From positions 372,001 through 436,000 of the forward strand of contig CM074821.1 of the NCBI GenBank assembly GCA_037447605.1: a stretch of 64,000 bases of DNA, written 5' to 3'. The notes beneath the pieces are model-generated. The model did no database searches. It saw only the letters and a program-made list of their open reading frames with translations, and was not told the origin of the DNA. The translations under genes were made by a program, and so were the position numbers. The number at the start of each line of letters is the position of its first letter. The first letter of the stretch is position 1. The stretch is from Zygnema circumcarinatum SAG 698-1b (lineage: Eukaryota > Plantae > Zygnematophyceae). Positions 671 to 38,178 of this stretch are shown piece after piece.

Positions 671-2209
671 TCAGAGGATGCAGGATTTCATAAGACCCTT
701 TTCAAGAGCCAAGCTTTCAGCGTATGTGGCGAGGTATCGCAGATTGAGACCTGACCAAAAATTGATGAATGTGAGAGCATCGTCTTTTGTGCTTCCGGGA
801 GGCAGAGGGAGCCAATAGCATTGCTGCACAAGGCTCATTTCTCGCCCTCCAATTATGACCTCCTTCACATGTGTAGCCACAGAAGCGTTCTGCATCATTT
901 CAGGAGAGATAAAAAAAAAAAGAACAGTTTTAGAAAAAAAGCGGAAAATAGGGCACCCCAGAAAAGTAACCAGAGGAAGACCTGAAAACTAACCAAGGTC
1001 CCAAGACCTTGGTCAGAAAAACTTCAAAGGCACCCTAGACCATGCTAACCCTCAACACCTCAAAACAGCAAACAAAGCAAGAATCATCCAAAGTAGTTCA
1101 ACCCAACAGACCCCAATTCAAACAATCCAAAATACTCCCCATTGCAAACGAAAAGAAATACCAACCAATCCAGAAAGCACCCCGAATCTTCCCCAATCCT
1201 CCCAAATCACTCCAGAAACCCCCCCTCCAAATCTAGAGTTACCCCCACCCTTCACCCCCCCGTTCCAAGTGCCTCAAAAAATCAAGCCTCTCCCACCCGA
1301 TTCAAATTTCTCTCCGATTCTAGCCCCCTCATCCAATTCCTCCCCAAATCTAGACCCTCCCCCCACCTCCTTAAAATTCCGCCCGCAAATCCTCACCAAA
1401 CCCACCGACCATGCCCCCTCCCCAAACGCCCCCCCCACCCCCCCCCCTCTCCCCTCACTTACTCTCCCCCCGCTCCCTCTCTACCTCTCTCTCCCACCCC
1501 CGCCCATTTCTCTCCCCTCTTCCTCCCCCCCCTCTCCCCTCACTTCCTCTCCCCCCGCTCCCCTCTCTTCCTCCCTCCCCCCCCCCGCCCATCTTCCTCT
1601 CCCCTCTCCCACCCCCCCCTATCCCCACTCTTCCACTCCCCCCTATCCCCTCTCTTCCACTCTCCCTCTTCCTCTTCCCCACCTCCCCCTCCCCCTCCCC
1701 CTCCCCCCCCCGCACCTCAAGTCCCGAGTCCCCCGCCACGACGGAGTAGAGCAGCGCTCTCGCCGCGTCGTCGCACGTGCGGACGCGCTCGCGGCGCCAC
1801 GTGCCCGCCCCGCCCGAGGCCTGCCGTACGACGCGCTGCTCCGCGCCGCCGCCCCCGCGCTCCGCCTCGCAGCGCCGCACAAGTGGGGCCCACCGCGCCG
1901 CGCCGGCGAAGTTGCGCACCACGCCCCACACCTGCATGCATGGGCATGCATGCAACCGGCCCTCACTGTTACAGTTACAGTTACAGTTACGCTTACGGTT
2001 ACTGTTACTGTGTGTGGTCTAGGGCGGCGGCTGGAGATTGAAAGAGCTCTGTCTCAGTTTTAGGGGCTACTCAGAGCACTACATTGTTGCACGTTGTGGG
2101 TATTGAAGCGTCTGTGAGGGTTCTCTAAAGAAAGATTGAAAAAAGGTATAACAAATGTGCAGTTTTTTCTTATTTGTTTTACTGGAAGAAGTAGGGAGGG
2201 AGAGAAGAG

Positions 2210-2269
<60 letters not shown>

Positions 2270-2301
2270 AGAGAAGAGAAGAGAAGAGAAGAGAAGAGAG
2301 A

Positions 2302-2368
<67 letters not shown>

Positions 2369-2504
2369 GTACGAGGTCGGGGGGGGCGTTGATCTGCTGC
2401 TCGAGGACGCTGCAGACGGTCTCCGCCTCGCCAGGGCCGCCGAAGGTCTCGGGTTCGATCCTCGCGGCCGCGCTTGGGACGGAAGAGGCGACAGCCATGG
2501 CCAT
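671..2504 (-). CDS. PYL: PYR/PYL/RCAR-like START/Bet v1-fold protein (188 aa, 3 exons), with divergent ligand pocket
   Basis: Exons are 2504-2373, 1931-1716 and 889-671, all phase 0 with GT-AG introns. The spliced protein ...CSVLEQQINAPPDL|VWGVVRNF...QRVVRQASGGAGTWRRERVRTCDDAARALLYSVVAGDSGLE|NASVATHV...SLVQQCYWLPLPPGSTKDDALTFINFWSGLNLRYLATYAESLA aligns colinearly with PYR1/PYL9 as recalled (APPELVWSIVRRF; SGLPA..TER..LDD; GGEHRL-NY; ESYVVDMPEGNSEDDT..F.....LNLQKLATVAE). Confidence 0.85.
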
Positions 2505-3460
2505 AGACCTCTCTCTCACCCCTTTCTCTCTCTCTCTTTCTTCTCTCTCTTCTCTCTCTCCCTCTCCCTCTCGCCCTCTCCCCCCCTCTCTACCTCTCTC
2601 TCTCTCCCTCTCTCCCTCCTTCTCTCCCTCTCTCTTCCTCTCTCCTTCTCCCTCTCTCTCTCCCGCTGTCACTTTCCCTCGTTCTCTCCCTCTCTCTCCC
2701 TCACCCCCTCTCTCGCTCTCTCCTTCAAAAAACGGATCAAGACAGAAGCTGGATGCTTCAGATTTGTTTTAAAGCTTCCAATTTTTTTTCCAAAAGCGAG
2801 CGAGGCCAGTAACGGATTCTGCCAGACCGTATTGTTCGTACACTATGTACGGATAGTCGTTATTGGTCGCCACGTGGAGGGCGACGGTCAAACCGACAAG
2901 TCAACAGTTGCCAACAGCGGGTCGTTTTCTCACACGTGCGGGTGACTACTAGAACCTTAAAAATGCAGTCAGGGACCAATCCGAAGTTGCCATGTGCGTA
3001 TTAATCAACGTGGCCATCGGTAATTGGATAATTTTTGCCACTCGACAAAACAAATTTTCAGGAGTCACAAAACGACAATACTGGATTTTTCGGTTTTTCC
3101 GGGCAGCAGAAATTGTTTCTGATTGGTCCAAATATTTGAGGCTCGGAGCAGTCCGCGACCGCACGTGTTGGCGAAGATTTTGAGGCCGAGATATGTGGAC
3201 ACATGCCACGTGACGAGCTTTGATTCGACTATTTTGTGACAATACCACGTGGTAAATTGTGATTCGTCATTTTCAGCACGGCCGTGCATGCCGAGATTTT
3301 GATTCGCTTATTGAGATATCGGCACGTGGCCTGCCACGGTGTCCCAATAATATCCAGCCGCAAGGTCATTTGTCGCGACTCGCGACCCATGTACTAATAT
3401 GTACGAAGTCACGTCTAAACCGACACGTTTCCATTACAGTACCCGCCCCTAATATTTTCT

Positions 3461-4526
3461 GGGTAGTGTTATTTCCACCCCTTTTTGGGATCCAAACACC
3501 CGTTCCCGACCGGGCAGATGTAAAAAAGGATTAAAAACGGAAAATGCTTTTTTCAGTCCTTTTTGGAATCGACACACACCTTTTCCGTCGGGCAGATATT
3601 ATTTTTGCAAAACATGGAAAACGATACCCGTCACCCCATTTTCAATATCTCGCTCCCCTGATTTTTTTTTTTGAGAGAAAAAAATATCGGCCTGCCCGAA
3701 TCCGCTCGGAGCGGAAGATCCGTCCGCCACGAGATCGTTCGCGGTTGGCCGTCCTTTACACGTGCAATCCATCTCAGCCGTCGATTTTCACGCATATCGC
3801 ACCAGGGCAGATCACCGTTAGATCTGTCGCCGGGCTCGGTCCAGCGAATGGCACGTGCCCACGTGTCCCGCCAAAGCCGGCTCGCAACTGCGAGTGCGCG
3901 CGTCCTCGGCCCGAGATCTCTGCAAAATTATGAGCTGGACCGGCCATCCTGTGGCGGCTCGCCATTGATAGCTGACAGCCAATCACCACCTGCCACATAT
4001 TCGATTGGATGACATGGCAATATGTGATTGGTCCAGGCTCTTAATATTTTTTTTTACGACATTTTGCGTTTCCTCGAAGTTGTGACAGTACGGATCCACT
4101 TTTTGACGGCTTTGGTGGGACACGTGGGAACGTGCCATTCGCTGGACCGAGCCCGGCGACAGATCTAACGGTGATCTGCCCTGGTGCGATCTGCGAGAGA
4201 ATTGACGGCTGAGATGGATTCCACGTGTAAAGGACGGCCAGCCGCGAACGATCTCGTGGCGGACGGATCTTCCGCTCCGAGCGGATTCGGGCAGGCCGAT
4301 ATTTTTTTCTCTCAAAAAAAAAAATCAGGGGAGCGAGATATTGAAAATGGGGTGATGGGTATCGTTTTCCATGTTTTGCAAAAATAAAATCTGCCCGACG
4401 GAAAAGATGTGTATCGATTCCGAAAAGGACTGAAAAAAGCATTTTCCGTTTTTAGTCTTTTTTTTACATCTGCCCGGCCGGGAAGGGGTGTTTGGATCCA
4501 AAAATGGGGTGGAAATAACACTACCC
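3461..4526. mobile_element. Non-autonomous foldback / long-TIR (MULE-like) DNA element
   Basis: Inverted arms of about 420 bp (3461-~3880 vs ~4107-4526) start GGGTAGTGTTATTTCCACCCC. The flanks are tattttct / tattttcg, an imperfect 8-bp direct repeat. No coding capacity. Confidence 0.75.
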
Positions 4527-7621: not shown

Positions 7622-10600
7622 ATGGGGACGGCGGACATTCTTGAAGCGGGTCAGCTCGAAGCTTAATTTAACCCATTTTCTTTCAGACGAGTGTGTGGGT
7701 GTGTTGGGGAGGGGAGGCTGAGAGACACGGGGAGGAGTGAGGGAGAGGGAGGGATACGAGAGGGAGAGGAGGGAGGGAGAGGGAGAGGGAGAGGGAGAGG
7801 GAGAGAGGATTTGGGAGGGAGTTGGAGTCCTGTGACATTGAGGAGAGAGAGCGAGAGGGAGGGAGCGAAGGGAGGGAGGGAGGGAGAGGGAAGGAGCTAT
7901 AGGGTAGGGGGTGGAGGGAGAGAGGTCCGAGAGGGGGAGGGGTGGAAGGAGTGGGTTGGAGGGAGAGGGAACGAGGTGGATGGGAGGATAGGAGAAAGGT
8001 GTGAGGAAGCGGGAGGGTGGTATCTAAGTGGAGGGGAGCAGAGGGAGGGAAGGGGATAATGGTGGGTGAGGGAGAGCCGAAGGGTAGAGGAGGGTGGGGG
8101 AGGGAAATTGTGAGTGGATAGAATCATAATGCGTAAAGTGAGAGAGGTAGGAAGTAGGGGAAGGAAGTGTGTGAGCATGTAGAGAGGGGTTCGTGGGAAG
8201 GTGAAGGCGACAGGACGGTGGAGGCAGAGAGAGAGAGGGGGAGGGAGAGAGAGAGAGAGAGGGAGAGAGTGGAGAGTGATATTGGGGGAGGGAGACAGGG
8301 AGAGGGGGAAATAGACATATGCTGATGCTCTCTAAGCGCCGGCAAAGTTGGGAGGAACGTCAATGGCTCCTCTTACTTGCCTTGGATGCATGCCAGTTCT
8401 CTCTCCCTCTCTCACTCACCCTCTATCCCCCCCTCCCTCCCTCCCTCCATAGTGAATTTTCACTTTATGTACAGTGTATTTTTTGTTGTACATCGTTATC
8501 GAGTATATTACAGAAAAGCGGGAAAAATGTGAGCTTGAAACTTATCTACGAATGTTTGCTCTACAGATTTCATAACAGCGGTTCCGTTCAATTCAACAGA
8601 AACTGAAACTGCCCCAAATATCGCACCAGATTTTACAACATTGATCGGCAATACGCCTCTGGTTTATATCAACAAGGTTTGAACGGTGGACTCTACTCAT
8701 AAAAATCATCAAACAATGTTATCATCATTATTTCTTTGCTTCCTTCTATTACAACCCCCAACCTTTGTCAATTTGTTTACGTGAGTTAAATTAGCACAGT
8801 TTTGGAATGTGAATCTTTCTTAAACGCGGAGATTAATCGTCATTTCATGTCCTGCGTATCTTAAAATATTTTATTATTTTTACTGATCTATCTCGCAGCT
8901 CGCTGAAGGATTGAATGCGAGAATTGCGGCGAAACTGGAGTATCTAAGTCCTGGAGGGTCTGTGAAAGACCGTATTGCTTTAAAGTGAGTGTTCCTCTCT
9001 CCTCTCTCACGCTCTTGCTTTCCTCCTAACTCCCCGTGTCTCTCCTCCCTATTCTCTCTCTCCCTCCCTCTTTTTCCTCCTCCTTCTCCTCCTCTCCCTC
9101 CCCCCCTTCGCTCCCTACCTCTCGTGCTTTCCTTCGGTCTCTCCGCCGCTCTTCTTCCTTTTCTCTCTCGCTTGTCCCTCCTTCCCTCCCCCACCGCTCC
9201 TCTCGCCCCACCCCCGACCCTTTCTTCTCCCTCCCTCAATTCCCAACATCCCCAAAACCTCCCCCTCCCCCTCCCCCTCCCCTTCCCCTTCTCCCTCCCC
9301 CTCCCCCTCCCCTTCCCCTTCCCCCTCCCCCTCCCCCTCCCCCTCCCCTTCCCCTTCTCCCTCCCCCTCCCCCTCCCCTTCCCTTCCCCCTCCCCTCCCT
9401 CCTCCTCCCTCCCCCTCCCCCTCCCCTCCTCCCCTCCCCTCCCCTCCCCCTCCCCCTCCCCCTCCCCCTCCCCCTCCCCCTCCCCCTCCCCCTCCCCCTC
9501 CCCCTCCCTCCCCTCCCCTCCCCCTCCCTCCCCTCCCCCTCCCTCCCCTCCCCCTCCCCCTCCCCCTCCCCCTCCCCCTCCCCCTCCCCCTCCCCCTCCC
9601 CCTCCCCCTCCCCCTCCCCCTCCCCTCCTCACAGCGCTGGCTGGCTGACTCCCTCCCTCCCTCCCTCCCTCCCTCCCTCCCTCCCTCCCTCCCTCCCTCC
9701 CTCTCTCAGCATGGTGGATGCGGCCGAGCGCGAGGGCGCGATCTCCCGCGGGCGGTCGGTCCTGGTGGAGGCGACCTCCGGGAACACGGGCGTGGGCGTG
9801 GCCGCGCTCGCGGCGGCTCGTGGTTTCCGGACGGTCCTGGTCATGCCCGACTCGGCCAGCGTCGAGCGCCGCCTCCTGCTGCTGCAGCTCGGGGCGAGGA
9901 TCGTCCTCACCGACCACAAGAAGGGGGTGGCGGTCAGTGCTCTCTCTCTCTCTTTCTCTTTCTCTCTCTCTCTCTCTCTCTCTGTCTCTGTCTCTCTCTC
10001 TGTCTCTGTCTCTCTCTCTATCTCTCTCGCTCTCTCTCTCTCTTTCTCTCTCTCTCTCACCTCTCGCTCTCTCTCTCTCACACACTTCTCGCTCGCTCTC
10101 TCTTTCCTCTCTCTCGCTTTCGCGCCCTCTGGATGGGTCCCCTTCCCTTCCCTACTCTCCCTCTCTCTTTCTCTTTCACTCCACCTCGCTTCCACTTGTC
10201 ACACGCGTTCACGCGTTGTTGCTTCGTTTCCTGAGAATTGTATCCACTCGTTCTGTGGGTCTCACTCTCTGTGTCTGCATTCGCATCCCTTCGTTCTCTC
10301 TTCCGTTCTCTCTCGTACTCTCTCCCTCTTTCTCACCTTGTTGATCACCGTTCTGCTGCATGCAGTCCCTAACCCTTTCCAGCACTCCCCCCCTTTGCAG
10401 GGTGTCTTTGAAAAACTTGAGGAGGTTATGCAGAAGACCCCCGACGCATATTCCTTGAATCAGTTTGAAAATCCGGTGAACGTGGCAACGCATGAAAGGA
10501 CAACCGGCCCTGAAATTTGGCGAGATACAGCCGGAAAAGTCGACATTTTTGTAGCGGGAGTGGGGACAAGCGGCACTATCGGTGGAGTTGGAAAATATTT

Positions 10601-11490
10601 GAAGTGAGTCACATGTGAAACTCGAACAGTTCCACTGTCACAGTTTCTGTTTCGAACTGAAATCATGGAAACGGCAAGAAACTGAAGGGGTTTGTTCTCT
10701 TTTTAAAGTGGTCTTTGGGTAGAGCTTATGGTCTGTTACCTTTTCTTTTCATTTTGAGGTTTTGAATGCAGGAGCCAAAACCCTAATGTTAAAATAATCG
10801 CTGTGGAGCCAGCAGAGAGCGCTGTGCTTTCAGGCGGTCCCCCGGGCCCTCACAAAATTCAAGGAACGGGAGCGGGAATTATTCCTCCCCTTTATAAGCG
10901 CGATGTCATCGACGAAGTGTTTGCGGTAAATTCGGAGCATTTCCTCTCAATGAGAGAGCGAGGAAATGTTGAGATTCCTTCTTCTTGAAGGAAGGAATGC
11001 TTTTATTTTCATTTTTTATTTTTTTAAGAGTAGAACTGGTGATCTGTGTCAACTGTTCTATGTCGAGAACTGAAGCTCGTTCCGTGGTTTCTATGTGGCA
11101 GGTAAAGAGTGATGACGCAATAGAAACGGCGAAGCAAATGGCTCTCCAGGAAGGCCTCATTGTGGGCATCTCCTCAGGTAAAGACTTCACAACCTCCAGC
11201 CCAAAAAAATTGAAATTTTATAAAAAAAGATTCACTTTATTTTTTTCTTTTTTTTAAGCAGATATGATCCATCTGATTCTTATGATCGAATTCAGTCTTA
11301 TTCTTTTACAGGCGCTGCTGTGAAGGCCTCTTTAGAGATCGCCAAGAGGGAGGAGAACAAGGGGAAGCTCATAGTGACTCTGCTCCCGAGCCTGGGCGAG
11401 AGGTACCTCTCCACGGAACTTTTCGCGGAGGCCAGAAAGGAGGCGGACATGCTGCAGGTCGAGGACGAGTACACGCATGTTCCGTTTTGA
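7622..11490 (+). CDS. OASTL: O-acetylserine (thiol) lyase / cysteine synthase
   Basis: Exons are 7622-7649 (tentative first exon, phase-compatible), 8568-8676, 8899-8984, 9710-9932, 10401-~10604, ~10771-10924, ~11102-11178 and ~11311-11490. Motifs: [13 protein letters not shown] (PLP Lys), [47 protein letters not shown]. Confidence 0.95.
9259..9625. repeat. (CCCCT)n / (CCCTCC)n intronic polypyrimidine tract
   Basis: Directly visible low-complexity tract in cysteine synthase intron 3. Similar R/Y tracts fill many introns and UTRs in the window. Confidence 0.95.
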
Positions 11491-16218: not shown

Positions 16219-18597
16219 ACTGCATGTGGCCGGCCAGTCTCCCGAAGGGAAGGGAACGCCCACGCGTACGCCCTTCGAGGCTCCTCCCTCCCTCCCCCTC
16301 CTGCGCGCTGTGAGTCCAAAACTACGAGCTACTCCTCCTCCTCCTCTCCTCCTCCTCTCCTCCTCCTCTCCTCCTCCTCTCCTCCTCTCCTCCTCCTTTC
16401 CTCCTCCTCGCCTCCTCCTCCTCCTCCTCCTCCTCCCCTCCTGCTCCTCCTCCTCCTCCTCTCCTCCTCCTCCACTCCTCCTCCTCCTATCCTCCTCCTC
16501 CTCTCCTCCTCCTCCTCCTCCTCCTCCTCCTCTCCTCCTCCTCTCCTCCTCCTCCTCGCCTCCNNNNNNNNNNTCCTCCTCCCCCTCCTCCTCACCCCCT
16601 CCTCCTCTCCCCCTCCTCCTCTCCTCCTCCTCCTCTCCTCCCCAAAGCAGGAAGCAGTGGTAGGCTCAGCCCCTCGGCCCCTCCGACATGCTTCTAAGGA
16701 CCTTTCCGAATTCCGATGCAGGACAACCTTCGGGGAGCAATTTGCCTTGTGGGCGGTGCGAGGGAATTTGAACTGACGGGGCCGTCCATCAGAAAGCACC
16801 TTCTTGGAGCTTTCAAAAATGCGGACGTGTTTGTGAATATGGGACTCGATGAGAACAGCTACAAGCTCATGATGTTCAGAAAAGTTCCCAATCTTGCAAA
16901 AGTGCGAATCTTTCCGCAGTCGCCGATTAGTGTTGGGCCCGAAGTAAGAGCAGTAAGTGCGGTAAATTCGCCGAATGGGATTCAGGTATGGAATGGTTCT
17001 GCTTTTCATCTGGAGATAACCCTCTTGATAGCTTCTTTTTTTCGCTTTTTATAAGCCTAACTGAACGAGCATCATAAACTGGCAAAGGGTCAGCTTCATA
17101 TATTGTGTCTATCTGTGCCCAATTCAGATTTCTGCAGAGTTTTAACTGAACTTGCAGTTGCTGGACCTTTTGTTGCAGGGCATATTGCAATATTTCAACC
17201 TTGTGGAAGGGTGCCTTGACTTGATTGATAGCTACAGCTTAATGCATTCTGTGAAATATGAATGGATTATTCGAACTCGAGTAGACTCCTTTTGGACCGG
17301 ACCTCCCCCTCCCCTCTTTCTGCAAGAAGGGATCTATGTAGTGCCCAAAGGCTCAAGGTTTGGAGGTTTGAATGACCGCTTTGGGTTCGGAAACTACAAT
17401 GTTAGTCAAATTGCTCTTAGTCGACTAACCATGCTCGACGAGTTGCGCAAAGCGGGCATGTCGAGACTCAACTCAGAGAAAGCATTCCGAGGGCAACTAA
17501 GTGTTCGGAAAATCAAGGCTTCATTACAGGAATTCGATTTTTGCATAGTTTCCAGACGAACATATTCCTGGTTTGCCAAAGATAGGCTCGTTCCTACCGT
17601 TGCTATGTCCTCTAAAGGTCCTATGAATGGGGCTAAATGCAGGCCCTGCACTCCACTTGTTTATGCAGGGAAATCAAAAGAATTTTTAAAGCAATGTAGC
17701 TGGGATTGGGGGTGGCCTGGAGGAAACCCTAATTTAGAGCTCTGCTATGCACAGGGCCCCTGGGAAGAAGGCTGGGAAGTAATCTTTGATCGAATAGTGG
17801 GCACAGAACTCGCTGCAGAACGAAAGGAAACTAAAGTTCAAACTTTGGACGATTGTATTGAGAAGTTTGATATGCTGAGGAGAGTCTCCGGGATGTATGA
17901 AGGGCCTTCAGGAAGAGTAGTCTGCCGATTATCGGAGTTGGGACCATTCAAAGTCTTAGCAAAGCGCGTTCCCATCTACATGAGCCAACTGGTTAAGTCG
18001 AGTATTGTATATTCCTTCGAGTTCAGCAGAAACTGGTCAGTGGAATTGCAGATCTATTCACTGACCGAGTGTTCCATCTATCTGTTTCAGAATGATTTTT
18101 CAAAGGTGGCTATGATTCAGGAGACCCCTGCAGTCTTCAAAAACGGAGTCGTGTGGGACGTTGAGAAGAGAGAGAGGGCGGAGTCTGCTGCTCTCCCGCT
18201 GCCCCCTCCGATGGCGAAGAGATTCGAAACCCTAAACTCTGCAATGGCAGCGTTGGGTCACGAAACCGTTGACTTATTGATGCTGCGAGTGACTGAAGAC
18301 AGTCTGCCTGCTGCAATGTCTATGCTCTCCGGTTGGAAAGGGAAGGAAAGGGGAAGCACAGAGGGAGAGGGAGAGGGAGAGGGAGGGGGAGAGGAAGAGG
18401 GAGTGGAGAGGGGAAGAGAGGCGCCTGTTTGTCAAATAGTTGTGAGATTAGAGATGGGCGTCAATGGAACCGTCAGAAGTGAAGTGAGTAGTGTGAGAGA
18501 GGTGTTGGAGGAGGTGGGCCTCTTCCTGGTCCATTGCAGGGGGCGGTTTGGGGGGGAGACATGCGTCTTTGTAAGAGGAAGGCCTTGTAGAAACTGA
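15104..18597 (+). CDS. Plant DUF7796-like type II membrane protein with extra C-terminal methyltransferase-like (Methyltransf_21/22-like) domain
   Basis: Phase-consistent exons are 15104-15242, 15726-15852, 16207-16309, 16722-16985 and 17179-18597; the first three are less certain. It has an N-terminal hydrophobic anchor (KALVLLTGLCFAALIPSIL). Family motifs: AICLVGGAREFELTGPSI, NSPNGIQGILQYFNLVEGC, WIIRTRVD, GGLNDRFG, AKCRPC, WEEGWE.IFD. Confidence 0.8.
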
Positions 18598-28134: not shown

Positions 28135-28944
28135 TTAATTAGGGCAAGTTCTTAAGTTGTGGCCTGGTTGCTTGCAATTAGAACATTTGTTACCCACAAT
28201 GTTGTCGAAATGGCTCTTGTCCTGGTTGATTGCCAGATTTCGCTCGCCACTATTTCGACCTCGTTTCATTGAAACAGGAACAGGGTGAGGGTTCTCCAAC
28301 TGCAGTGGTTCGCAAGCCAAAACTTCATCTACCTTCGATGCAAGGGCCAAAGTTGCTGAGGAATCGTTTGCATAAAGCATGCTTGTCAATGCCTTGATAG
28401 TCTTTGCCCGTGGTGATAACGATGGTTCAGTTTCAGGGGGTCTCGTTTTTTCCACAATAGAGGTTCGACCAGCTGAATCTCTCCTCATTGCAGCAATCTC
28501 ATTGTACACTACTCTTTTGGTTGTATGGTGGTTATTGTACTGGGATCGTAGAGTAGACATAATGGATGAAACGCTGTCGCCGTTTCGTGCCATCTCTCGA
28601 ACACATTCCTTCTCGCGAGTATCCAAGCGCTTATTCTCGGCGTACCCACTGGAAATTAAATGGTTGTGCTCTTCAACGACAGATGTTACAACCCAGACGT
28701 CCTTCTTCTTGGAAAATGCCGCCCTAATGTTGAAAGGGCAATTTTTCAAGCGGGTGGAGGTATGCCTCTTCTTGCTACTCCCTTCCAGACCTCTATCCTC
28801 GTAGGTCCCCCCGCTTAAGCATTGCAAGAAGAGTCGGCGACTGTCGCTATGCCTGCCGATCTTGATGTGAACTCCTTCCTGCTTGTAGTGCTCGGTGATG
28901 ACTTGTACAAGCTCATCGCGGGTCTTATACTCAGGTGGTGGCAT
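28135..28944 (-). CDS. MULE-transposase-derived protein (269 aa): FAR1/WRKY-GCM1-type DNA-binding domain plus C-terminal CCHC knuckle, no DDE/SWIM core
   Basis: Uninterrupted ORF from MPPPEY. It contains LQC..GG.Y...[16 protein letters not shown]...[12 protein letters not shown], then a helix-turn-helix-like segment, and ends KRGR...[17 protein letters not shown]. Confidence 0.75.
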
Positions 28945-29589
28945 TTGTGTGGAGATTGCAAACCGAGAAGAGGAGAGAAGAGGAGGGGAGGGGAGGGCAC
29001 GGGAGAGAAGGGAACGGAAGGGGAGGGGAAGGGAGAAAAGAGAAGAGAACGGGAGGGGAGGGGAGGGGAGGGAACGGGAAGTGAGGGGAGGGGAGGGGAA
29101 GGGAGGGGACGGGAGGGGAGGGCAGGGGAGAGAAGGGGGAGAGAAGGGAACGGGAGGGGAGGGGAGGGGAGGGAACGGGAAGGGAGGGGAGGGGAGGGAA
29201 CGGGAAGGGAGGGGAGGGGAGGGGAGGGAGGGGAGGGAACGGGAAGGGAGGGGAGGGGGAGGGACGGGAGGGGAGGGCAGGGGAGAGCAGGGAACCGGAG
29301 GGGAGGGGAGGGACGGGGTATGATTGTCCCCAAAAAAAGTTGAAGTTTGAAGTTCAAAGTCCGTTTGTCCCAAAAATTCGAAGTTTACTGAAACTCCACA
29401 ATCGAAATTCATGATTTCAGAATTCTCAAGTCCATCTGCCCCGGATTTCGCACAATAGATGCGGGTTTTGCAGAATACCGTACGGTACCAAAACGTTCAC
29501 ACGCTGAGGCTGTATGGTGTTGCGAGTCTCGTCAGGCGCTACTTTCAAGTTCTTTCACCGATTCGGTTCGCATTTTCCGCATGTTGAGC

Positions 29590-36988: not shown

Positions 36989-38055
36989 ACTCTCGTTTTA
37001 GGAATCCTCGCCAGGCAGAGGCGCCGTCGAGCAGCTCAACTTTTGGTTTGACTTTGGTCAACTCAATTTTCATTGTTCAGAACTTTCCATTGGTCAGTCG
37101 CCACTGGTCAGTTTTCTGGCTTATTCAAATGTTTTTCGGTCAGCTCAAAACTTTTGTTGAGCGGGCCATGGCCCCAAGGGCGATGAAGACGAATCTTGGC
37201 CGTCGATGTTCCTGAAAAATCCTCAGTCGACAGTTTAGATCACGCCACGTGGCAGAATAGCACTTGTTTACCGTACAAGAGTTATAACCCTAACCGGACT
37301 ACTGTACTCTTCTACATGTGACGGTTTGATCTGTCCGTACGCGTCACATGTGACAGGCGGCGTGGAAATTCAACGGGACGAGCCACCTCGAATTTGGGTT
37401 TAAAATTAAAAATAAAATAAAGAACCCGCCACAAATCACAGGCTTCCACGTGGAAAAACGGGTTCAGGTGTCGTAATTTACGACCCAGCGTTTAACAAAA
37501 TGGAACTACTATTCACACACCTTTTTTTTTAAGATACACACCTTCAAAAGAAAAATCCTCCTCCTCCTTACCATAAAAACCCTAATGAAATCTGACCGGC
37601 GAAAAAAGGTGTGTATTTATACAAAGAAGGTGTGTCACTTGCATTTTCCTTAACAAAATCGCGTTATAATTTACCTCCTTGTGCTTATTCGTACAAAGCA
37701 GATGTACAGAAATGTACGACCTTGTACGGTTTGTGTACGGCTGCCCACGTGCACGATCGAAATTTGAGGTCCTCGCGTCGGGCAGCTCCGTCGGCTCCCA
37801 GCGCGCCACGTACCCCCTCCCCCCCGCGGGCGCCAATTTTTTTTAGCATCCACGACGGCCAGAAAGTTTTACATATCATTCGGAAAACATATTACAGGTC
37901 TGGTCTATCCGTAACTCCCCCTGGCGCCTGTTTTTTTGAGCATCCTGAACGGCCAGAAATTCTTACATATCATTCGGAAAACATATTACAGGGTTGTTCC
38001 CTCCGAAAACAGAAACCAAAATGTTTCGGCTTTGTATTGCCACCGACATCCCGAT

Positions 38056-38178
38056 TGACACGTGGCAGTAATCGGACGGTTGGGTCTAGTCGCGTTTCAG
38101 ATCCAGCCAATGGGAGAGCCGAAACTTGCGCCCCACACGTGTCACATCCGCAGGAGCGGCATTCTATGCCACGTGGCA
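38056..38178 (+). promoter_or_regulatory. G-box cluster upstream of THF1
   Basis: TGACACGTGGCA (38056-38067), CACGTG (38136-38141) and the palindromic TGCCACGTGGCA (38167-38178) lie 300-430 bp before the ATG. Confidence 0.5.

What the first reader, a model, noticed from the sequence alone, without database searches (positions are those of the whole stretch)
671..2504. PYL ABA-receptor homologue with a completely rebuilt ligand pocket, gate and latch
Seen: a 188-aa three-exon protein whose exon 2 aligns without gaps to PYL9/PYR1 as recalled, with SG, ER, DD, GD and L in register. Established: ABA binding uses PYR1 K59, E94, Y120 and E141, the SGLPA gate and the HRL latch, and a Zygnema PYL was reported to inhibit PP2C independently of ligand. 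Here K59 becomes A, Y120 becomes A, E141 becomes Q, the gate is SGGAG and the latch is SGL; only E94 is kept. Inference: this protein probably neither binds ABA nor docks PP2C in the usual way. It may be a receptor or enzyme for a different small molecule, or an intermediate between polyketide-cyclase-like START proteins and land-plant ABA receptors.
Basis: partly seen in the sequence, partly recalled or inferred. Interest (0 to 1): 0.82.

Follow-up and report, generated by a model that had tools for sequence, protein, structure and literature searches.

The report
Divergent PYL-like START gene in alga
This alga, from the sister group of land plants, carries an intact three-exon gene for a protein clearly related to the plant drought-hormone (abscisic acid) receptors, but it lacks the hormone-binding lysine and the gate and latch loops, so it is probably a receptor-like relative with another, still untested job.

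Summary
On the minus strand, exons 2504-2373, 1931-1716 and 889-671 are joined by two phase-0 GT-AG introns and encode 188 aa.

- **Homology.** The spliced protein scores 79.8 bits (E 9e-27) against an HMM of 112 angiosperm PYLs. Residues 29-178 align with one 1-residue gap, and the alignment runs straight across both junctions. Shuffled controls reach 3 bits at most.
- **Closest solved structures.** Exons 2 and 3, searched separately, hit only PYL ABA receptors in the PDB apart from two chance-level partial matches.
- **Difference from described algal PYLs.** Those keep an S/TGL/IPG gate, and the three Mesotaenium ones have Arg at the Lys site. This gene has neither.
- **New point.** Its CL1 loop (RWAPLVRRC) matches bacterial SRPBCC proteins rather than PYLs. 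Yet it has lost the NYRST motif that bacteria and PYLs share, so it is a mosaic, not a clean intermediate.
- **Absence elsewhere.** No orthologue or self-copy was found in public protein or contig collections.
- **Transcription.** Support is indirect, from word shares in sequencing runs only.
- **Not done.** No structure, phylogeny with algal PYLs, or biochemistry.

The scan also noted a second divergent PYL-like gene elsewhere in this genome, which I did not test.

Verdict: a new, more extreme variant of the known ABA-independent PYL-like proteins, of moderate interest.

The parts
2373..2504 (-). Exon 1 (ATG at 2504-2502; 44 aa). Its last 16 residues carry the PYL-type motif C-S-x-L-x-Q-x-I-x-A-P-P-x-L.
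   Evidence: It adds about 16 bits to the PYL-HMM score when joined to exon 2 and tiles on the PYL alignment.
1932..2372 (-). Intron 1, GT-AG, phase 0, 441 nt, rich in (GA)n and (GTTACA)n-like repeats.
1716..1931 (-). Exon 2 (72 aa). Contains CL1 (RWAPLVRRC), the gate equivalent SGGAG, the retained E-R motif, D-D, and the latch equivalent S-G-L.
   Evidence: Pfam Polyketide_cyc2 E 2.5e-7. The 20 best PDB hits are all PYLs, best E 1.1e-3; two chance-level partial matches (E 0.48 and 0.71) follow. PYL HMM 28.9 bits alone.
890..1715 (-). Intron 2, GT-AG, phase 0, 826 nt, C/CT-rich low complexity.
671..889 (-). Exon 3 (72 aa plus TGA). Holds the beta-sheet end and C-terminal helix with the PYL-type pattern Y-x5-P-x-G-x4-D-x3-F-x7-N-L-x2-L-A-x3-E.
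   Evidence: PDB hits are all PYLs, best Marchantia MpPYL1 at E 2.9e-5. The only hit among 1.84 billion representative proteins is a Quercus PYL. RNA-type run X16 and six further small runs of unrecorded type, listed by the RNA-run search, hold 100% of the sampled words of 560-889.
2871..3328 (.). Cluster of six CACGTG G-box cores, 370-820 nt upstream of the ATG. Putative promoter elements; the function is inferred.
   Evidence: 44 sites in the window against 7.1 expected, and six of them lie within these 458 nt.

Best explanation
A real, probably transcribed, lineage-specific member of the PYR/PYL/RCAR branch of the START/Bet v 1 (SRPBCC) superfamily in a zygnematophyte-type alga.

**Kept from PYLs (shown).** The helix-grip core, the PYL-length gate loop with its Ser-Gly, the pocket Glu (E94 equivalent) and the PYL-type C-terminal helix.

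**Missing (shown).** The ABA-carboxylate Lys, the gate Leu-Pro-Ala, the latch His-Arg, and Tyr120, Ser122 and Glu141.

**Inferred consequences.** It cannot sense ABA. It is unlikely to clamp the PP2C tryptophan lock through a closed gate and latch as ZcPYL8, MeenPYL3 or land-plant PYLs do. Most likely it is a receptor-like paralogue that has left the PP2C-inhibiting role, carrying a remodelled cavity (small residues at 59, 87-89 and 120; new Gln, Arg and Trp at 83, 92 and 163) for another small hydrophobic or acidic ligand. At most it is a weak, non-inhibiting PP2C binder like MeenPYL1 or bacterial PrPYL.

Homology and substitutions are shown. Everything about function is inference.
For: - The gene model has canonical splice sites.
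- The full-length protein scores 79.8 bits, E 9e-27, against the PYL HMM, continuous over both junctions, with shuffles at 3 bits or less.
- Pairwise scores to 112 PYLs are 44-81 bits (median 62), against 27-35 bits to the bacterial SRPBCC homologues.
- Apart from two chance-level partial matches, PDB searches with exons 2 and 3 return PYL receptors only, and no LFS, Bet v 1, MLP or bacterial cyclase entries.
- Exon 3's only hit in 1.84 billion proteins is a PYL.
- The residue substitutions are mapped.
- Literature: the Lys and the gate Leu are both required for ABA dependence. The CL2 Ser mediates PP2C contact and is retained here. Described algal PYLs are ABA-independent and keep S/TGL/IPG.
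- RNA-type run X16 holds 0.34 of the words of 600-2600, where exons alone predict 0.28-0.33, and all words of exon 3 plus the 3' flank.
Against:
- No orthologue was found anywhere, so purifying selection is untested.
- Pocket changes are not significantly more frequent than changes at other conserved positions (p = 0.07). General fast divergence would therefore explain the pattern as well as directed remodelling.
- The retained gate Ser-Gly leaves PP2C contact possible.
Confidence: 0.62

Rival explanations
1. It is still a constitutive, ABA-independent PP2C binder or inhibitor like the described zygnematophyte PYLs, using the retained gate Ser-Gly and the C-terminal helix surface.
For: S83-G84 (the PYR1 S85-G86 equivalents) are kept. 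The CL2 Ser is the key PP2C contact, and even bacterial PrPYL with a different CL2 binds PP2Cs weakly. MeenPYL1 binds PP2Cs without activating signalling.
Against: The gate Leu-Pro and the latch His-Arg that shape the docking surface and the Trp-lock site are replaced by Gly-Ala and Ser-Gly. All active algal PYLs keep S/TGL/IPG.
Confidence: 0.2
2. It is a duplicate drifting without constraint: a transcribed but functionless young pseudogene that still has an open frame.
For: - Many family-invariant residues are lost, including NYRST, which is conserved from bacteria to PYLs.
- Changes are spread over the whole protein rather than confined to the pocket.
- No orthologue was found.
- A second divergent copy was noted elsewhere in the genome (unchecked).
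Against: - The 188-codon frame is intact across three exons with canonical splice sites.
- 29 of 50 near-invariant PYL core positions are kept, and the alignment is almost indel-free.
- GC3 of 0.89-0.92 in exons 1-2 resembles coding exons nearby.
- Exon 3 is present in seven small transcriptome-sized runs; only X16 is labelled RNA, and that provisionally.
Confidence: 0.15
3. It is not of the PYL clade at all, but a generic plant or bacterial-type SRPBCC/Polyketide_cyc2 protein (LFS-like or similar) that resembles PYLs by shared fold.
For: - Pfam sees only Polyketide_cyc2, and only in exon 2.
- The CL1 motif R-W-x-P-x-V is the bacterial/generic form.
- Language-model look-alikes of exon 2 are generic SRPBCC/Bet v 1 clusters.
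Against: - The top 20 PDB hits of exon 2 and all 48 of exon 3 are PYLs, and no other SRPBCC family scores above chance.
- It scores 79.8 bits against the PYL HMM, versus 37-44 bits for bacterial PYL-like SRPBCC proteins, which also align over the N-terminal half only.
- It has a PYL-length gate with Ser-Gly and a PYL-type C-terminal half.
Confidence: 0.08

Closest known systems
Zygnematophyte ABA-independent PYL homologues (ZcPYL8; MeenPYL1-3; MekrPYL1; ZyspPYL1), PMC12717121, PMC13099562, PMC5899452
   Same: - Same lineage (a zygnematophyte-type alga) and same family by sequence.
- Similar size (ZcPYL8 is 186 aa; this protein is 188 aa).
- Not expected to bind ABA.
- Some of the described proteins (MeenPYL1, MeenPYL2, ZyspPYL1) also fail to activate signalling.
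   Different: The described ones keep the S/TGL/IPG gate, and the three Mesotaenium ones have Arg at the K59 site. This one has SGGAG and Ala, an S-G-L latch, and a bacterial-type CL1. No biochemical data exist for it.
Land-plant PYR/PYL/RCAR ABA receptors (PYR1, PYL2, PYL9, MpPYL1; PDB 3K3K, 3KDH, 3W9R, 9TB5)
   Same: - Best and essentially only solved relatives.
- 25-34% identity.
- Co-linear over about 150 residues.
- Retained: C-S-x-L-x-Q-x-I-x-A-P, V-W, R-x-F, S-G, E-R, D-D, G-D, L117, N119, F159, N167-L.
   Different: Lost: K59, L87, P88, A89, S92, H115, R116, Y120, S122, E141 and V163.
Seed-plant pseudo-receptors (AtPYL13 and PYL13-like), PMC12717121
   Same: PYL-family proteins made ABA-independent by loss of the invariant Lys and the gate-region Leu.
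   Different: PYL13-type proteins differ at only those two key positions and keep the gate and latch. Here both loops are replaced.
Bacterial PYL-like SRPBCC proteins (PrPYL of Paraburkholderia; here Acetobacteraceae plasmid proteins L001-L003)
   Same: CL1 motif R-W-x-P-x-V-(K/R)-x-C, no Lys at the K59 site, and no SGLPA gate.
   Different: - The bacterial gate is 3 residues shorter.
- Their C-terminal half does not align with PYLs or with this protein.
- They keep N-Y-R-S-T, which this protein has lost.
- They score only 27-35 bits against this protein.

Membership tests
SRPBCC / START-Bet v 1 superfamily (Pfam Polyketide_cyc2) | Significant match to PF10604 above the gathering score | tested here: met
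   Exon 2 alone scores 31.5 bits against a cut-off of 27.4, E 2.5e-7.
PYR/PYL/RCAR family (homology) | Closer in sequence to PYLs than to any other SRPBCC family, and co-linear over the whole domain | tested here: met
   PYL HMM 79.8 bits over residues 29-178. Apart from two chance-level partial matches (E 0.48, 0.71), PDB hits are PYLs only. The representative-library hit is a PYL. Bacterial homologues reach only 37-44 bits against the same HMM.
PYR/PYL/RCAR family (clade) | Monophyly with algal and land-plant PYLs in a tree that includes bacterial homologues and other plant SRPBCC proteins | not tested
   No canonical algal PYL, bryophyte PYL or LFS-like sequence could be obtained. The searches returned only angiosperm subfamily-II-type PYLs and three bacterial proteins.
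PYR/PYL/RCAR ABA receptors (function) | Invariant Lys in CL1 (PYR1 K59) that binds the ABA carboxylate | tested here: not met
   Ala at the aligned position; CL1 reads R-W-A-P-L-V.
PYR/PYL/RCAR ABA receptors (function) | Gate loop S/T-G-L/I-P-A/G (CL2) with the invariant Leu | tested here: not met
   The loop is S-G-G-A-G; only Ser-Gly is kept.
PYR/PYL/RCAR ABA receptors (function) | Latch H-R-L (CL3) | tested here: not met
   S-G-L; only Leu is kept.
PYR/PYL/RCAR (algal, ABA-independent type) | Binding or inhibition of clade A PP2C | not testable with these tools
   Needs Y2H, pNPP or SnRK2-release assays, or at least a complex model. The spliced protein could not be submitted for structure prediction.
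PYR/PYL/RCAR gene structure | Introns at the two positions said to be typical of subfamily I PYLs | not tested
In this gene the introns fall between L44|V45 (just before V-W) and E116|N117 (just after the latch). No land-plant PYL7-10 genomic sequence was available to compare.

The most novel reading that the evidence does not exclude
The gene is a surviving early branch of the PYL family. On this reading it split off after the streptophyte gene had acquired the PYL-length gate, the PYL-type C-terminal half and introns, but before the Lys-bearing Y-K-x-F CL1 and the S/TGL/IPG gate arose. That would make it a living intermediate between bacterial SRPBCC proteins and PP2C-regulating PYLs. Its pocket, with the basic charge moved from position 59 to the S92 position (Arg90 next to the retained Glu92), might bind a different acidic small molecule.
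Probability: 0.13. Interest if true: 0.75.

Novelty: new variant of a known kind. Interest (0 to 1): 0.42.

Why it matters
How the ABA receptor arose from a ligand-independent START protein is an active question (Sun 2019; Lu 2025; the PNAS 2026 MpPYL1/ZcPYL8 work). Every algal PYL studied so far already has the PP2C-docking gate.

This gene is clearly PYL-related, yet it lacks the gate, the latch and the Lys, and it has a bacterial-type CL1. Two outcomes are possible:
- It may be an earlier evolutionary state, which would be valuable for ordering the steps PP2C binding, then inhibition, then ABA binding.

Either outcome can be tested with assays already established for ZcPYL8 and the MeenPYLs. 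If it turns out to be a drifting duplicate, it is of little importance.

Tried and rejected
- **The search for homologous proteins** with stop-free ORFs around exon 2 and exon 3 found no hits and no self-match. This gene is therefore not in the public protein collection within the length ranges searched (91-290 aa for exon 2, 58-183 aa for exon 3).
- **The search of protein representatives** with exon 3 returned a single PYL hit and no orthologue.
- **Contig scans** with exons 2 and 3 in metagenome contigs, and with exon 2 and a PYL alignment in prokaryote genomes, returned nothing, so there is no close bacterial donor.
- **tblastn** of exons 2 and 3 against plasmids found no match. A PYL query did find Acetobacteraceae SRPBCC genes, which I used as bacterial comparators.
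- **Atlas look-alikes** of the exon pieces gave generic SRPBCC clusters for exon 2 and noise for exon 3.
- **Exon 1 alone against the PDB** was too short to detect anything.
- **The look-up of encoding contigs** with the 75-aa exon-3 ORF found nothing on record.
These places lie in the CT-rich 5' flank outside the coding sequence.
- **Structure prediction and fold search** were left out.
- **Literature search** for PYL intron positions gave nothing usable.
- **Second copy.** I rejected the idea of a second PYL-like copy in this window.
- **GC3 jump.** I rejected the idea that the GC3 difference between exons 2 and 3 marks a chimeric gene, because a neighbouring PALP ORF shows the same kind of GC3 island.

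Full report
**Gene model.** The finding lies on the minus strand. Reading the reverse complement gives an ATG at 2504, a donor CTC|GTACGT after 2373, an acceptor ...GCATGCAG|GTG before 1931, a donor GAG|GTGCGG after 1716, an acceptor ...GATGCAG|AAC before 889, and a TGA at 673-671. Both introns are GT-AG and phase 0 (441 and 826 nt), and both are filled with GA, CT or C-rich microsatellite. GC3 is 0.89 and 0.92 in exons 1-2 but 0.49 in exon 3. The same kind of GC3 island occurs inside a neighbouring PALP ORF, so I do not read this as a sign of a chimera.

**Is it more than chance, and are the junctions right?** I fetched 119 PYL proteins (all angiosperm PYL4/5/6/11/12-type) and built an HMM from 112 of them.
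- The spliced protein scores 79.8 bits (E 9e-27). Residues 29-178 align to HMM positions 25-175 with a single 1-residue gap, and the alignment runs uninterrupted through both splice junctions.
- Scores grow as exons are joined: e2 28.9, e3 23.4, e2+e3 63.3, e1+e2 44.7, all three 79.8. Two hundred composition shuffles reach 3.0 bits at most.
- In the tool alignment A1 the three exon pieces tile end to end on the PYLs.

Homology therefore supports each exon and each junction.

**Which family?** Pfam reports only Polyketide_cyc2, in exon 2.
- Against all PDB sequences, the 20 best hits of exon 2 are PYLs (PYL2, PYL13, PYL9, PYL3, PYL5, PYR1, PYL10 and rice PYL 4OIC). Two chance-level partial matches follow (E 0.48 and 0.71).
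- All 48 hits of exon 3 are PYLs, with Marchantia MpPYL1 best at E 2.9e-5.
- No LFS, Bet v 1, MLP or bacterial cyclase entry appears above chance level.
- Exon 3 searched against 1.84 billion representative proteins gives one hit, a Quercus PYL.
- Pairwise, the protein scores 44-81 bits (median 62) against the 112 PYLs, with 25-34% identity.

The claim that it is a PYL homologue is well supported, and the rival reading of a generic SRPBCC protein is weak.

**The residues.** HMMER and MAFFT agree. In PYR1 numbering:
- K59 to Ala and F61 to Leu
- V83 to Gln
- gate S-G-L-P-A to S-G-G-A-G
- S92 to Arg
- E94 kept
- F108 to Tyr and I110 to Val
- latch H-R-L to S-G-L
- Y120 to Ala and S122 to Val
- E141 to Gln
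- F159 and N167 kept
- V163 to Trp

The PYR1 residue numbers come from my knowledge of the published structures; the motif equivalences come from the alignments. Lu et al. 2025 (PMC12717121) show experimentally that the invariant Lys and the gate Leu are both needed for ABA dependence. They also show that the CL2 Ser contacts the PP2C. The Lys and the Leu are gone here, and the Ser is kept.

Two caveats apply to 'completely rebuilt'. First, 29 of 50 near-invariant PYL columns are retained. Second, changes are not significantly concentrated in pocket columns (p = 0.07).

**Comparison with known algal PYLs.** Earlier notes of this scan describe the genome as an alga from the sister group of land plants. 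PYL homologues are known in Zygnematales and Serritaeniales (PMC13730384).
- ZcPYL8 is a 186-aa, ABA-independent PP2C inhibitor.
- Mesotaenium has three homologues, of which MeenPYL3 is active, MeenPYL1 binds PP2Cs but does not activate signalling, and MeenPYL2 also fails to activate it.
- All of these are reported to keep an S/TGL/IPG gate, and the Meen proteins have Arg at the Lys site.

The present protein has neither feature, so it is not one of the described proteins. It is a more extreme variant.

**A new observation.** A tblastn search with a PYL against plasmids found SRPBCC genes in Acetobacteraceae. Aligned with these, the window protein shares their CL1 motif: R-W-L-P-G-V-K-S-C in bacteria, R-W-A-P-L-V-R-R-C here, and A-Y-K-x-F-V-K-S-C in PYLs. 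This looks like retention of the pre-PYL state.

Other features point the other way. The bacterial gate is three residues shorter, their C-terminal halves do not align with PYLs or with this protein, and they score only 27-35 bits against it. Both bacteria and PYLs keep N-Y-R-S-T after the latch, whereas this protein reads N-A-S-V-A. The protein is therefore a mosaic: PYL-type overall, ancestral-looking in CL1, and uniquely diverged in gate, latch and beta-5. Only a tree that includes the canonical algal PYLs can decide, and I could not bring those sequences into the session.

**Expression.**
- An RNA-type run of the same organism (X16) holds 0.34 of the sampled 31-mers of 600-2600. Exons plus UTR alone predict 0.28-0.33, while DNA runs hold 0.64-0.90.
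- X16 holds all words of exon 3 plus the 3' flank. Six further small, transcriptome-sized runs of unrecorded type, listed by the RNA-run search, also hold all of them.
- This is indirect support for a spliced transcript. Several runs of unknown type hold 0.56-0.75 of the words, so intron-containing RNA or DNA is also present in some libraries.
I sent nothing from those places to search tools afterwards; they lie in the CT-rich 5' flank outside the coding sequence.

**Uniqueness.** No self-copy or orthologue was found in the 5.8-billion or 1.84-billion protein sets, in metagenome contigs, in prokaryote genomes or in plasmids. There is no second copy in the window. The scan has noted another divergent PYL-like gene elsewhere in this genome (s1-319565, unchecked).

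**Mechanism.**
- Shown: PYL-family homology, an intact gene, and loss of the ABA-binding and gate/latch residues.
- Inferred: no ABA perception and no canonical closed-gate PP2C inhibition. Most likely it is a receptor-like paralogue with a remodelled cavity. Arg at the S92 position, next to the retained Glu, could replace the lost Lys as the pocket's charged group.
- Alternatives: a weak constitutive PP2C binder, or a drifting duplicate.

Upstream of the gene, six G-box cores lie within 458 nt. This suggests bZIP or bHLH control, but G-boxes are enriched throughout this window.

**Verdict.** This is a new variant of the known ABA-independent PYL-like proteins, of moderate interest. Its value depends on the phylogeny and on PP2C assays.

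Noticed in passing
window 3488-4499: Large inverted repeat about 1 kb upstream of the gene. Arms 3522-3879 and 4107-4464 are 358 nt long, 96% complementary and separated by 227 nt, with outer 40-nt arms at 3488-3527 and 4460-4499. It looks like a foldback or MITE-like element, or a hairpin-RNA source.
   Followed up: no
window, whole; clusters at 2871-3328, 3759-4227 and 37246-38175: CACGTG (G-box) occurs 44 times against 7.1 expected from shuffles, and the sites are clustered. An earlier scan note reports G-box-containing arrays elsewhere in this genome.
   Followed up: partly
window 671-2504 and 9036-10607: Sharp GC3 heterogeneity within genes. The PYL-like exons 1-2 have GC3 of 0.89-0.92 and exon 3 has 0.49. 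The PALP ORF goes 0.5, then 0.94, then 0.5 along its length. This may reflect GC-biased gene conversion islands or a 5' GC gradient.
   Followed up: partly
window 1200-1715, 1965-2010, 2200-2370: The introns are almost entirely low-complexity sequence: a C/CT-rich tract, (GTTACA)n-like hexamer repeats and a long (GA)n array.
   Followed up: no
window 9036-10607 (+), 17152-18597 (+), 28135-29412 (-): Neighbouring coding regions: a PLP-dependent enzyme (PALP, E 1.4e-29), a DUF7796 protein (E 6e-91) and an AFT/FAR1-type DNA-binding protein that may be transposase-derived. None has an obvious link to ABA signalling.
   Followed up: partly
L001-L003 (Acetobacteraceae plasmids): The bacterial PYL-like SRPBCC genes sit between an SDR oxidoreductase gene and an aldo/keto reductase or oxidoreductase gene in two of the three plasmids fetched; in the third only the SDR neighbour is listed. 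This suggests a small-molecule redox operon context for the bacterial relatives.
   Followed up: no
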